Of a stretch of 20,179 bases of DNA, positions 9,868-11,688 are shown in pieces (position 1 is the stretch's first letter; each line of letters starts with the position of its first letter). Source of the stretch: Octopus sinensis (Eukaryota); the NCBI RefSeq assembly GCF_006345805.1, contig NW_021824180.1, positions 1 through 20,179 of the forward strand, given 5' to 3'. Position numbers and translations under genes: made by a program. The notes beneath the pieces are model-generated. The model saw nothing but the letters and a program-made list of their open reading frames with translations. It was not told the DNA's origin and searched no databases.

Positions 9868-9966
9868 CACACACACATACACACAAAACGACGCACAAAG
9901 ACACACACAAATATGCACGCGCAAACAAACACACGCACGGACACATACACGCACACACACACAAAC
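9868..9966. repeat. Degenerate (CA)n microsatellite
   Basis: CA-rich low-complexity tract. Confidence 0.85.
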
Positions 9967-10015
9967 TCACGGTCTCCTCCATTTCACTTTTCTTCTTGTG
10001 CTGCAATAGCCGCTG

Positions 10016-10396
10016 GCAGAAACGTTAGCACGACGGGCGAAATGCTTGGCGGCATTTCGTCTGCGGTTACGTTCTGAGTTCAAATTCTGCCGAGGTCAAC
10101 TTTGCCTTTCATCCTTTCGGGATCGATTAAATAAGCACCAGTTACGCACTGGGGTCGCTATAATCGACTTAATCCGTTTGTCTGTCCTTGTTTGTCCTCT
10201 CTGTGTTTAGCCTCTTGTAGGTAGTAAAGAAATAGGTATTTCGTCTCTCTTTACGTTCTGAGTTCAAATTCCGCTAGGTCGACTTTGTTTTCATCCTTTC
10301 GGGGTCGATAATTTAAGTACCAGTTGCATACTGAGGTCGATCTAATCGACAGGTCTCTCCTCAAAAATTCCGTGCCTTGTGCCTAGAGTAGAAAAG
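10016..10396 (+). mobile_element. 5'-truncated SINE S1 dimer with two different tails
   Basis: Head, body and tail alpha, then a second body with tail beta. Flanked by an 11-bp TSD AATAGCCGCTG at 10005-10015 and 10397-10407. Confidence 0.9.
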
Positions 10397-10414: not shown

Positions 10415-10445
<31 letters not shown>

Positions 10446-10532
10446 TATTAGAGACAAAACCACTATTTTGCAAAACAAACAAGGAAAGACTTAATCAAAA
10501 CATAAAATTTTAATAAATAGTCAAAAAAACCG

Positions 10533-10575
10533 CCACTACAATCGTTTCTTGTCTTGATCGACAATCTTCAGGTGG
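10533..10575 (-). ncRNA. Minimal type I hammerhead ribozyme motif (minus strand, copy 1)
   Basis: Exact reverse-complement mirror of 10623-10665. Predicted cleavage between 10537 and 10536. Confidence 0.75.
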
Positions 10576-10622
10576 ACTTCCAATAAGTCAGTTTCATAAT
10601 TTGAAACTGACTTATTGGAAGT

Positions 10623-10665
10623 CCACCTGAAGATTGTCGATCAAGACAAGAAACGATTGTAGTGG
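10623..10665 (+). ncRNA. Minimal type I hammerhead ribozyme motif (plus strand, copy 1)
   Basis: Stem I CCAC(10623-26)/GTGG(10662-65); core CTGAAGA(10627-33); stem II TTGTC/GACAA with loop GATCAA; GAA(10650-52); stem III AC/GT with loop GATT; triplet GUA. Predicted cleavage after 10661. Confidence 0.78.
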
Positions 10666-10988
10666 CGGTTTTTTTGACTATTTATTAAAATTTTATGTTT
10701 TGATTAAGTCTTTCCTTGTTTGTTTTGCAAAATAGTGGTTTGTCTCTAATAATATTTTATAATATTTTACTATAAAATTGGATTTAATACTAAATCTGAT
10801 TTTTTTCCCTGTAAATTTGGATTTATTCCCTAATATTTATTATTTATATATATATATATATAATATATATATATATATATTATATATATATATATAAAAT
10901 ATTATTAGAGACAAAACCACTATTTTGCAAAACAAACAAGGAAAGACTTAATCAAAACATAAAATTTTAATAAATAGTCAAAAAACCG

Positions 10989-11031
10989 CCACTACAATCG
11001 TTTCTTGTCTTGATCGACAATCTTCAGGTGG
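10989..11031 (-). ncRNA. Minimal type I hammerhead ribozyme motif (minus strand, copy 2)
   Basis: Mirror of 11079-11121. Predicted cleavage between 10993 and 10992. Confidence 0.75.
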
Positions 11032-11078
11032 ACTTCCAATAAGTCAGTTTCATAATTTGAAACTGACTTATTGGAAGT

Positions 11079-11121
11079 CCACCTGAAGATTGTCGATCAA
11101 GACAAGAAACGATTGTAGTGG
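11079..11121 (+). ncRNA. Minimal type I hammerhead ribozyme motif (plus strand, copy 2)
   Basis: Identical to 10623-10665. Predicted cleavage after 11117. Confidence 0.78.
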
Positions 11122-11300
11122 CGGTTTTTTTGACTATTTATTAAAATTTTATGTTTTGATTAAGTCTTTCCTTGTTTGTTTTGCAAAATAGTGGTTTGTC
11201 TCTAATAATATTTTATAATATTTTACTATAAAATTGGATTTAATACTAAATCTGATTTTTTTCCCTGTAAATTTGGATTTATTCCCTAATATTTATTATT

Positions 11301-11341
<41 letters not shown>

Positions 11342-11413
11342 TATATACATATGTATACATTTCTGTAGTATATCCTCTTTGTCCCTCACCTCCACTCTCT
11401 CTTTATATGTATA

Positions 11414-11468
<55 letters not shown>
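11342..11468 (+). repeat. Duplicate of 5744-5815 followed by (TATC)n
   Basis: TATATACATATGTATACATTTCTGTAG...CCTCCACTCTCTCTTTATATGTATA has 2 substitutions and 1 indel versus 5744-5815. TATC run at 11414-11468. Confidence 0.9.
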
Positions 11469-11469
11469 A

Positions 11470-11688
11470 TCTCTGTGTTTAGCCTCTTGTAGGTAGTAAA
11501 GGAATAGGTATTTCATCTGTCTTTACGTTCTGAGTTCAAATTCCGCTAAGGTTGACTTTGTTTCCATCCTTTCGGGGTCGATAATTTAAGTACCAGTTGC
11601 GTACTGAGGTCGATCTAATCGACAGGTCTCTCCTAAAAACTTCCGTGCATTGTGCCTAGTGTAGAAAAAAATAGCCGCTGATACTGGA
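11470..11688 (+). repeat. Genomic duplicate of 10198-10415 (SINE 3' part plus its right TSD and flank)
   Basis: About 11 substitutions and 1 indel in 218 bp. Shares private SINE variants and the non-SINE flank AATAGCCGCTGATACTGGA. Confidence 0.88.

What the first reader, a model, noticed from the sequence alone, without database searches (positions are those of the whole stretch)
10623..10665. Unannotated minimal hammerhead ribozyme inside the palindrome arm
Seen: every core element is in the correct order and spacing for a type I hammerhead: CCAC, CUGAAGA, a 5-bp stem II, GAA, A-U and C-G stem III pairs, GUA, GUGG. Stem I may extend past a 2-nt bulge through wobble and A-U pairs. Established: minimal type I hammerheads with very short stem III are characteristic of Penelope-like element pLTRs and of metazoan retrozymes. 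Caveat: the first stem II pair is U-A rather than the usual purine-pyrimidine (G-C), which may slow cleavage.
Basis: partly seen in the sequence, partly recalled or inferred. Interest (0 to 1): 0.88.

Follow-up and report, generated by a model that had tools for sequence, protein, structure and literature searches.

The report
Hammerhead motif of a Penelope-like retroelement
The "palindrome" is two head-to-head copies of a short spliced retrocopy of a Penelope-like retrotransposon, and the flagged 43 bases are that family's hammerhead-ribozyme motif, a known kind of feature whose activity is untested and which almost certainly cannot fold in these palindromic copies.

Summary
The letters are exactly as described. 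10623-10665 (+) reads CCAC-CUGAAGA-UUGUC/GAUCAA/GACAA-GAA-AC/GAUU/GU-A|GUGG. That is a complete type I hammerhead core with three helices. The window holds four copies, two on each strand. Chance is very unlikely: 0 descriptor hits in 20 Mb of simulated sequence.

Rfam Hammerhead_1 and a model built from this genome's own hammerheads do not recognise it. The 10.1-11.1 pair is U-A instead of the conserved G-C. The copies are too alike to test covariation.

The motif occurs about 3,242 times in the 2.7-Gb genome, always in the 3'-terminal exon of one element family. Intron-retaining copies (about 1,241) have GTAAGT...TTTTAG exactly where the window's copies (about 1,455 genome-wide) carry a precise exon-exon join (10613|10614). 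So the window copies are spliced retrocopies. The same 3' region lies 2-4 kb downstream of a reverse transcriptase/GIY-YIG ORF with Hydra-clade Penelope-like-element motifs. Insertion into (TA)n, head-to-head 5'-truncated twins with variable centres, and a tail on one copy only are all hallmarks of these elements.

Verdict: a Penelope-like-element hammerhead motif, a new member of a known kind. Catalysis is unproven. In the window's perfect hairpins it is predicted not to fold.

The parts
10415..10439 (.). (TA)n microsatellite, the insertion target on the left flank
   Evidence: Copies in the 30 fetched family loci typically abut (TA)n.
10440..10596 (-). Inverted copy 1 (left arm). It is a spliced retrocopy lacking the last ~88 nt ('tail-less'), and its 3' end joins (TA)n at ...AATAATATTTT.
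   Evidence: The mirror of the exon-exon junction lies at 10584|10585.
10533..10575 (-). Hammerhead motif of inverted copy 1 (minus strand). Predicted cleavage lies between + coordinates 10537 and 10536.
10593..10601 (.). Head-to-head junction (centre of the palindrome). It varies between loci.
   Evidence: The spacing of the minus and plus motifs is 62-115 nt in 21 of 23 pairs on contig C1.
10597..10613 (+). 5' exon remnant of forward copy 1 (..CATAATTTGAAACTGACTT)
   Evidence: In long copies this same sequence is followed by GTAAGT (L112, L113, L114).
10614..10845 (+). 3' exon of forward copy 1 (ATTGGAAGT-hammerhead-...-tail). The exon-exon junction is 10613|10614.
   Evidence: In long copies the sequence is preceded by ...TTTTAG. 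Genome-wide there are 1,455 spliced and 1,241 intron-retaining joins.
10623..10665 (+). The flagged hammerhead motif. Helix I is CCAC/GUGG and the core is CUGAAGA..GAA. Helix II has 5 bp starting with U10.1-A11.1. Helix III is A-U and C-G with loop GAUU. The cleavage triplet is GUA|G at 10661|10662.
10669..10675 (+). T7 run directly 3' of helix I. In predicted minimum-energy folds it pairs with the CUGAAGA core, giving a competing structure.
10758..10845 (+). 3' 'tail' present only on the forward copy of each pair
   Evidence: A tail at one end only is described for PLE insertions.
10846..10896 (.). (TA)n between the two units
10897..11052 (-). Inverted copy 2, with its hammerhead motif on the minus strand at 10989-11031
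11053..11302 (+). Forward copy 2 with tail, with its hammerhead motif at 11079-11121
11303..11357 (.). (TA)n on the right flank

Best explanation
The 43 bases are the hammerhead motif carried in the 3'-terminal region (the pseudo-LTR equivalent) of a Penelope-like retroelement (PLE) family of Hydra-clade type.

Shown:
- The family has autonomous-looking copies. These carry a reverse transcriptase + C-terminal GIY-YIG ORF, then about 1.6 kb, then a short 5' exon, then a 1.3-1.8-kb GT-AG intron, then a 3' exon that starts 9 nt before helix I and ends in (TA)n.
- The window holds four short copies in which the 5' exon is joined precisely to the 3' exon, so they were made from spliced RNA.
- These copies sit in a (TA)n microsatellite as two tandem head-to-head pairs. 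Each 'palindrome' is one full copy plus an inverted, tail-less twin.

Inferred:
- The pairs arise during target-primed reverse transcription by the PLE enzyme, through priming on both nicked strands or template switching.
- In transcripts of source elements the motif folds as a type I hammerhead with a weak 2-bp helix III. Two motifs pair through the self-complementary ACGAUUGU/ACAAUUGU segment to form a double hammerhead, which cleaves after GUA (10661|10662).
- This would trim multimeric or read-through element RNA, as proposed for PLE and retrozyme hammerheads.
- The copies in this window are most likely inert products. A transcript through them would zip into a perfect ~150-bp hairpin.
For: Motif and chance:
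- All core positions and three helices are present in four window copies.
- The descriptor gave 0 hits in 20 Mb of null sequence.
- There are 3,242 genomic copies against 0 for the reversed-pattern control.

Retroelement nature:
- Long copies L112-L114 read ...GAAACTGACTT|GTAAGT...TTTTAG|ATTGGAAGTCCACC. The window reads ...GAAACTGACTT|ATTGGAAGTCCACC.
- There are 1,455 spliced and 1,241 intron-retaining joins.
- A third upstream exon uses the same acceptor in L034.

Insertion pattern:
- Solo copies exist.
- Pair centres vary.
- Orientation is head-to-head in 26 of 27 close neighbours and never tail-to-tail.
- The tail is on one copy only.
- (TA)n flanks are typical.
- These match published PLE traits: an inverted 5'-truncated twin, a tail at one end, microsatellite bias and retained introns.

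Parent element:
- L118 has reverse transcriptase (YRDD, SNHP) and GIY-YIG pieces upstream on the same strand.
- 6 of about 9 checkable endonuclease hits on contig C1 have the motif 2.1-3.75 kb downstream on the same strand.
- Homologues carry the CxCX5C linker, CxxC..E..N..CxH and DKT that define the Hydra clade. That clade inserts in (TA)n and always carries hammerheads.
- The motif is the only hammerhead-like motif in about 35 kb of long copies, even with a looser descriptor.

Dimer design:
- The predicted homodimer minimum-energy fold is exactly the double hammerhead: -21.4 against 2 x -6.5 kcal/mol. This is the same behaviour as an Rfam-positive hammerhead of this genome.
- The subfamily change G to A makes the 8-nt helix III segment a perfect palindrome.

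Precedent for a non-G-C base of helix II:
- Axolotl HHR_Amex2 has U.U there and self-cleaves.
- A second PLE family here has U.U there, 533 copies, with A at position 17 in about 95%.

Intron position: an intron end next to helix I is reported for D. virilis Penelope.
Against: - Rfam Hammerhead_1 and its clan give no match at the gathering score, at E<=10 in 401 nt, or at E<=10 in 65 nt. The same model scores a neighbouring hammerhead at 36.4 bits.
- A covariance model built from 16 hammerheads of this genome scores the candidate 9.6 bits (E about 0.8), which is noise level.
- G10.1-C11.1 is described as highly conserved in PLE hammerheads, but here it is U-A. From established hammerhead biochemistry, N7 of G10.1 helps bind a catalytic metal, so activity may be low.
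- Helix II is 5 bp without the bulged nucleotide typical of PLE minimal hammerheads.
- No covariation is available. The motif is identical in all 22 copies examined apart from one loop position.
- The monomer fold is 6-7 kcal/mol above the ensemble. Rfam-positive hammerheads here show 4.7-9.1 kcal/mol, so this test does not discriminate.
- Inserted copies contain the whole motif, so their template RNAs were not cleaved.
- Pfam and PDB profiles do not recognise the parent ORF.
Confidence: 0.72

Rival explanations
1. The motif is a hammerhead look-alike or a dead relic. The core letters are intact, but the U10.1-A11.1 pair, the 4-bp helix I and the competing pairing with the T7 run make it catalytically inert. 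On this reading the element multiplies without any self-cleavage, and the conserved 3' exon is kept for other reasons, for example recognition by the reverse transcriptase.
For: - Both covariance models fail.
- The conserved G-C pair is absent.
- All inserted copies derive from uncleaved RNA.
- PLE clades without hammerheads amplify very well, and the function of hammerheads in PLEs is called unclear.
- The whole 3' exon, not only the motif, is more conserved (96-98%) than the intron (85-91%) among long copies.
- The predicted minimum-energy fold pairs CUGAAGA with the U-run.
Against: - Every invariant core base, all three helices and a self-complementary helix III coincide in a 245-nt element. 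The chance estimate is about 1e-8 per base, before counting the extra pairs.
- It sits where PLE hammerheads sit and on the sense strand.
- Natural active hammerheads with a non-G-C base of helix II exist.
- PLE hammerheads in general cleave poorly in vitro.
Confidence: 0.2
2. The palindrome is a DNA-level foldback element or MITE with terminal inverted repeats. It would be moved by a transposase or made by replication errors in (TA)n, and the hammerhead-like string would be coincidental.
For: There are perfect 140-nt arms with a 5-nt spacer, AT-rich flanks and thousands of near-identical copies.
Against: - Solo, non-palindromic copies exist (L003, L007, L025).
- The centre differs between loci and one copy always lacks the tail, so the ends are not symmetrical.
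- A precise GT-AG intron is removed relative to long copies, which requires an RNA intermediate.
- The same 3' end follows a reverse transcriptase/GIY-YIG ORF.
Confidence: 0.03
3. Whatever the motif's origin, the biologically relevant product of loci like this one is the long perfect hairpin RNA. Read-through transcription would give about 150 bp of double-stranded RNA that feeds small-RNA silencing of the family.
For: - The predicted fold of 10441-10760 is -254 kcal/mol, z = -40.
- Sub-threshold matches to plant and animal microRNA precursor models reflect only the hairpin shape.
Against: - All microRNA matches are far below their gathering scores (49 against 211 bits and similar).
- No expression data are available.
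- This idea does not explain the hammerhead motif, and it is compatible with the best explanation.
Confidence: 0.05

Closest known systems
Hammerhead motifs in the pseudo-LTRs of Penelope-like elements (Cervera & de la Pena 2014, PMC4209133; Craig et al. 2021, PMC8557442)
   Same: - Type I topology and a short helix I (4 bp).
- Helix III of 2 bp with a self-complementary loop that allows a double hammerhead.
- Sense strand, near the 3' end of the element.
- Element inserted in (TA)n with inverted 5'-truncated twins.
- Intron end next to helix I, as in D. virilis Penelope.
- Thousands of copies.
   Different: - The 10.1-11.1 pair is U-A, not the 'highly conserved' G-C.
- Helix II is 5 bp without the unpaired base after A9.
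- It is not recognised by Rfam Hammerhead_1.
- The intron is 1.3-1.8 kb, whereas the Penelope intron is short (my recollection, not checked here).
Axolotl retrozyme hammerhead HHR_Amex2 (Cervera & de la Pena 2020, PMC7229834)
   Same: - 2-bp helix III capped by a tetraloop.
- Weakened base of helix II (U.U there, U-A here).
- Expected to work better as a dimer.
- Carried by a non-autonomous, AT-rich repeat linked to PLEs.
   Different: - Axolotl motifs sit in head-to-tail tandem arrays of about 350 bp and give circular RNAs.
- Here head-to-tail neighbours are rare (1 of 27), and the usual arrangement is head-to-head.
Hydra clade of Penelope-like elements (Craig et al. 2021)
   Same: - C-terminal GIY-YIG endonuclease with a CxCX5C linker.
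- CxxC and CxH around the conserved E and N.
- DKT motif, (TA)n targets and a hammerhead present.
- Reverse transcriptase too divergent for standard profiles.
- The clade is recorded in molluscs.
   Different: - Published Hydra elements are under 3 kb with 'canonical' hammerheads.
- This family has an extra ~3 kb of 3' region with a long intron and a non-canonical 10.1-11.1 pair.
- The RWK motif was not found.
- Clade placement rests on motifs only, with no phylogeny.
Schistosoma Sm-alpha, a SINE-like element with a hammerhead (from my own knowledge, not checked here)
   Same: A short non-autonomous retroelement of a few hundred bases that carries a type I hammerhead in its 5' part and is present in thousands of copies.
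   Different: - Sm-alpha has a canonical, active hammerhead and Pol III-type features.
- Here the short copies are spliced Pol II-like transcripts of a PLE terminal region, and a T7 run would stop Pol III right after the motif.

Membership tests
Hammerhead ribozyme, type I (Rfam RF00163; consensus core) | Invariant core C3 U4 G5 A6 N7 G8 A9 ... G12 A13 A14, A15.1-U16.1, H17, in type I order | tested here: met
   CUGAAGA, GAA, A-U and GUA| are read directly and recovered by the descriptor.
Hammerhead ribozyme, type I (Rfam RF00163; consensus core) | Three helices around the core | tested here: met
   Helix I has 4 bp, helix II 5 bp and helix III 2 bp. Helices I and II are in the minimum-energy fold of the isolated 43-mer.
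Hammerhead ribozyme, type I (Rfam RF00163; consensus core) | G10.1-C11.1 (purine-pyrimidine) pair at the base of helix II | tested here: not met
   U10634-A10649. This pair is described as highly conserved. An exception with activity exists in the axolotl.
Hammerhead ribozyme, type I (Rfam RF00163; consensus core) | Score at or above the Rfam gathering threshold (34 bits) | tested here: not met
   There is no hammerhead match at the gathering score or at E<=10. The positive control HHR1 in L034 scores 36.4 bits. My own model gives 9.6 bits.
Hammerhead ribozyme, type I (Rfam RF00163; consensus core) | Compensatory changes that keep helices I-III | tested here: inconclusive
   The motif is invariant apart from a G/A change in loop III, which improves dimer pairing, across spliced, unspliced and chimeric forms. 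There is no power.
Hammerhead ribozyme, type I (Rfam RF00163; consensus core) | Mg2+-dependent site-specific self-cleavage; loop-loop tertiary contacts | not testable with these tools
   This needs transcription assays or RNA-end mapping.
PLE / retrozyme-type minimal hammerhead | Short helix III (1-2 bp) with a palindromic 15.2-16.2/loop 3 that allows a double hammerhead | tested here: met
   ACGAUUGU and ACAAUUGU are self-complementary. The cofold minimum-energy structure is the double hammerhead.
PLE / retrozyme-type minimal hammerhead | Lies in the terminal repeat / 3' region of a PLE, on the sense strand | tested here: met
   It lies 2.1-3.75 kb downstream of the endonuclease coding region on the same strand in 6 loci, and it is the only such motif in the long copies.
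PLE / retrozyme-type minimal hammerhead | Long helix II (6-8 bp) with an unpaired base after A9 | tested here: not met
   Helix II has 5 bp and no bulge.
Penelope-like element, Hydra clade | Reverse transcriptase plus C-terminal GIY-YIG endonuclease in one ORF | tested here: inconclusive
   The motifs FD..FYPSI, YRDD, SNHP and GIY..YIG are read in L118 and in 7 homologues of 454-857 aa. Pfam and PDB profiles are silent.
Penelope-like element, Hydra clade | CxCX5C linker; CxxC and CxH around the conserved E and N; DKT instead of DKG; no CCHH | tested here: met
   CTCRDKSNC is present in L118. CNCx5C is in all 5 homologues in which that motif was found. CxxC..E..CxH is in 6 of 7 homologues. DKT is in 3 homologues. 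RWK was not found. CCHH absence was not tested.
Penelope-like element, Hydra clade | Insertion into (TA)n; inverted 5'-truncated twin; tail at one end; retained intron | tested here: met
   compared with the descriptions.
Non-LTR retrozyme (metazoan) | Head-to-tail tandem arrays of 150-450-bp units, each with a hammerhead | tested here: not met
   1 of 27 close neighbour pairs is head-to-tail and 26 are head-to-head. The window's 456-bp period is a tandem of inverted pairs.
MITE / foldback DNA transposon | Symmetrical terminal inverted repeats with fixed ends and target-site duplication; no RNA intermediate | tested here: not met
   There is an asymmetric tail, a variable centre, solo copies and a precise intron loss.

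The most novel reading that the evidence does not exclude
Splicing and the hammerhead may be functionally coupled in PLEs. The 3' splice site lies 9 nt upstream of helix I in this mollusc-type Hydra-clade family, and an intron end also abuts helix I in Drosophila virilis Penelope. The short spliced terminal-region RNA (5' exon + hammerhead exon) is itself a major retrotransposition template here, with about 1,455 copies. If this adjacency is conserved by selection, splicing would decide which helix I context the ribozyme sees, and so whether the RNA is cut or copied. The U10.1-A11.1 variant would then be a deliberately slow ribozyme.
Probability: 0.15. Interest if true: 0.6.

Novelty: new member of a known kind. 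Interest (0 to 1): 0.35.

Why it matters
Hammerheads in Penelope-like elements are known, but their role is still called unclear. This family offers a clean natural test set in one genome. The same motif occurs in thousands of spliced, intron-retaining and chimeric copies. It has a rare U-A pair at the base of helix II and an intron that ends next to helix I. It also shows that perfect palindromes in (TA)n tracts of this genome are by-products of PLE integration, not foldback transposons or hairpin genes, which matters for repeat annotation. For the scan, the flagged string is real and correctly attributed, but it is an ordinary feature of a known element class.

Tried and rejected
- Rfam at the gathering score and at E<=10 on 401 nt and 65 nt gave no hammerhead match. 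The only matches were hairpin-shaped microRNA models far below threshold.
- A covariance model built from 16 Rfam-type hammerheads of this genome was too sequence-specific. It skipped helix II and scored the candidate at noise level.
- A second, more diverse alignment was too badly aligned by MAFFT to model.
- Covariation and conservation tests had no power. Copies are 97-100% alike, and the most diverged long copy has 0 changes in the motif against about 1.4 expected.
- Thermodynamic preference for the hammerhead fold does not discriminate, because Rfam-positive hammerheads of this genome show the same 5-9 kcal/mol penalty.
- I looked for the parent among 21 3' flanks of Pfam-detectable GIY-YIG PLEs and found no sequence similarity. 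The parent was found instead by following widely spaced head-to-head motif pairs.
- Pfam, PDB sequence profiles and tRNA search on the element and ORF found nothing.
The ORF evidence therefore rests on one frameshifted copy, read through once with X at the joins for a homology search, and on its homologues.
- I rejected the MITE/foldback reading and a Pol III SINE reading. There is no tRNA-like part, and the T7 run would terminate Pol III right after the motif.
- A literature search for mutational data on the 10.1-11.1 pair found nothing usable.

Full report
OBSERVATION

The window is contig C651 of a 2.72-Gb, 13,516-contig eukaryotic assembly. Bases 10623-10665 (+) read CCAC CUGAAGA UUGUC-GAUCAA-GACAA GAA A-C-GAUU-G-U A GUGG. 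This is the full hammerhead core in type I order, with a 4-bp helix I, a 5-bp helix II and a 2-bp helix III. Cleavage is predicted at 10661|10662.

A loose descriptor of my own finds this motif four times in the window and nothing else. The sites are + 10623-10665, + 11079-11121, - 10533-10575 and - 10989-11031. The same descriptor found nothing in 20 Mb of second-order Markov sequence. My analytic estimate is about 1e-8 per base. That is about 5e-4 per window, but tens of chance hits per genome, so context matters.

The motif lies in the right arm of a perfect palindrome (140-nt arms, 5-nt spacer). The whole unit is repeated with a 456-bp period between (TA)n tracts.

STANDARD MODEL TESTS

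Rfam finds no hammerhead at the gathering score, at E<=10 in 401 nt, or at E<=10 in 65 nt. The genome does have Rfam-positive type I hammerheads of up to 48 bits. One of them, in locus L034, scores 36.4 bits in the same kind of search.

A covariance model built from 16 of these hammerheads scores the candidate 9.6 bits, E about 0.8. The best background hit in the window scores 10.5 bits, and the alignment skips helix II. So the candidate is not a canonical member by profile. Its helix II sequence is unlike the conserved GACCC/GGGUC type, and its 10.1-11.1 pair is U-A.

WHAT THE PALINDROME IS

Thirty family loci show that the basic unit is a ~245-nt element, not a palindrome:
- It begins (AT)GACTTCATAATTTGAAACTGACTT-ATTGGAAGT-hammerhead and ends ...TTATTATT-(TA)n.
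- Solo copies exist (L003, L007, L025).
- Most loci are head-to-head pairs whose centre differs from locus to locus.
- One copy of each pair carries the last ~88 nt (the tail). The other stops at ...AATAATATTTT and runs into (TA)n.

A whole-genome pattern count gives 3,242 copies of the motif with at most 3 mismatches, and 0 for the reversed control. Among the first 100 places on contig C1 there are 23 minus/plus pairs, spaced 62-115 nt (plus one each at 261 and 701 nt). There is one head-to-tail pair and no tail-to-tail pair.

These traits match published descriptions of Penelope-like element (PLE) insertions (Craig et al. 2021): strong 5' truncation, an inverted 5'-truncated copy next to the full one, a tail at one end only, and a bias for microsatellites.

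RNA INTERMEDIATE

Widely spaced minus/plus pairs led to long copies (L112, L113, L114). In these, the sequence ...ACTTCATAATTTGAAACTGACTT is followed by GTAAGT. After 1.3-1.8 kb...TTTTAG precedes ATTGGAAGTCCACCTGAAGA.

The window's copies join ...CTGACTT directly to ATTGGAAGT... at 10613|10614 (mirror image at 10584|10585). This is a precise GT-AG intron removal.

Genome-wide there are 1,455 spliced joins and 1,241 intron-retaining joins. In L034 and one other locus a different upstream exon (...GGTGAAG|), coming from an element with an Rfam-positive hammerhead, is joined at the same acceptor.

So the window's copies are retrocopies of a spliced RNA. The intron ends 9 nt before helix I. Intron retention, and an intron end abutting helix I, are both reported for Penelope.

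PARENT ELEMENT

Locus L118 carries frameshifted ORF pieces on the same strand, upstream of the 5' exon, in 20% G+C sequence:
- reverse-transcriptase motifs (FIQIDIDNYYSSI, LYRDDLLLV, NSNHP);
- a C-terminal GIY-YIG-like domain preceded by CTCRDKSNC.

A search of the genome with the endonuclease piece gives over 15,000 first-look candidates. All 150 scored had E<1e-63, with open frames of up to 859 aa. On contig C1, 6 of about 9 checkable hits have an intron-retaining motif on the same strand 2.1-3.75 kb downstream. The background density of that motif is about one per 2 Mb.

Pfam and PDB profiles do not see the ORF. Its homologues of 454-857 aa share three traits that define the Hydra clade of PLEs: the CxCX5C linker, CxxC...E...N...CxH, and DKT. 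That clade inserts into (TA)n, occurs in molluscs and always carries a hammerhead.

In about 35 kb of long copies, the candidate is the only hammerhead-like motif. This holds even when I allow a U3-A8 core or a bulge, and Rfam finds none.

HOW IT WOULD WORK

Helix III plus its loop, ACGAUUGU, is self-complementary. In a large subfamily it is ACAAUUGU, a perfect palindrome.

The predicted homodimer minimum-energy structure is exactly the double hammerhead. It has an 8-bp intermolecular helix III and gives -21.4 kcal/mol against 2 x -6.5 kcal/mol. An Rfam-positive hammerhead of this genome behaves the same way. This is the design described for PLE and retrozyme hammerheads, which cleave poorly as monomers.

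The missing G-C pair has precedents:
- Axolotl HHR_Amex2 has U.U at that place and self-cleaves.
- A second PLE family here has U.U there and an otherwise valid core. It reads CUGAAGA-U-UGCA..UGCA-U-GAAA-GUAC-UA|GUU and has 533 copies.

As a monomer in a solo unit, the fold costs 6-7 kcal/mol relative to the ensemble. That is within the 4.7-9.1 kcal/mol range of the genome's Rfam-positive hammerheads. In the window's inverted pair it costs about 79 kcal/mol, because the arms form a perfect hairpin.

Three steps are inference: cleavage itself, the role in trimming multimeric or read-through RNA, and the origin of the inverted twin in target-primed reverse transcription.

LIMITS

- There are no expression or cleavage data.
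- No other eukaryotic genome could be searched, so there is no covariation evidence.
- Clade assignment rests on motifs only.
- The source organism is not given. One homologue is an Octopus bimaculoides protein that is 83% identical over a short stretch. From memory, the assembly size fits an octopus genome. This is a hint, not a result.

VERDICT

It is not shown to be an active ribozyme, and in these palindromic copies it is almost certainly inert. It is a new member of a known kind and of moderate interest.

Noticed in passing
window 10051-10350: Two direct repeats of ~182 bp (82-85% identical) lie immediately upstream of the element. They are an unidentified repeat, and no tRNA was found in the window.
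   Followed up: no
L034:1977-2458 (G000:C5, next to the long palindrome): A second, unrelated perfect palindrome (147-nt arms, 1-nt spacer) with 159-nt direct repeats also lies between (TA)n tracts. Other families apparently form the same architecture.
   Followed up: no
L098, L099, L103, L091, L107, L108 (3' ends of Pfam-positive GIY-YIG elements): About 80 nt before the (TA)n end these elements carry UUGAUAA-GGUUC..GAACC-GAAAC-AUGU. This is a hammerhead-like motif with the U3-A8 core covariation reported for Schistosoma PLEs.
   Followed up: partly
L095:887-935, L106; 533 places genome-wide: Another PLE family carries a hammerhead with U.U at the base of helix II and the palindromic helix III AGUACU. 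Position 17 is A in about 95% of the listed copies. It also forms head-to-head pairs 80-140 nt apart.
   Followed up: partly
G000:C16:25146363 and 25146794 (L036, L037): Rfam-positive type I hammerheads lie 431 bp apart on the same strand, a retrozyme-like tandem arrangement.
   Followed up: no
L034:1240-1826 and G000:C12:50403703-50404617: These are chimeric copies. An upstream exon from an element with an Rfam-positive hammerhead is joined at the same splice acceptor as in the window's family, giving two hammerheads about 190 nt apart in 587-nt inverted arms.
   Followed up: partly
L031:1597-1610 versus window 10529-10542: There is a 14-nt identity (AACCGCCACTACAA) between the region downstream of an Rfam-positive hammerhead and the antisense of the candidate's 3' end. 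It is unexplained.
   Followed up: no
window 10669-10675: A T7 run lies directly after helix I. It would terminate Pol III, and in predicted folds it pairs with the CUGAAGA core.
   Followed up: partly
L112-L114 versus each other: Among long copies the 3' exon is 96-98% identical while the intron is 85-91% identical. The whole terminal exon, not just the motif, evolves more slowly.
   Followed up: partly
window 9868-9972 and 11414-11472: A CA-rich microsatellite and an (ATCT)15 array flank the insertion region.
   Followed up: no
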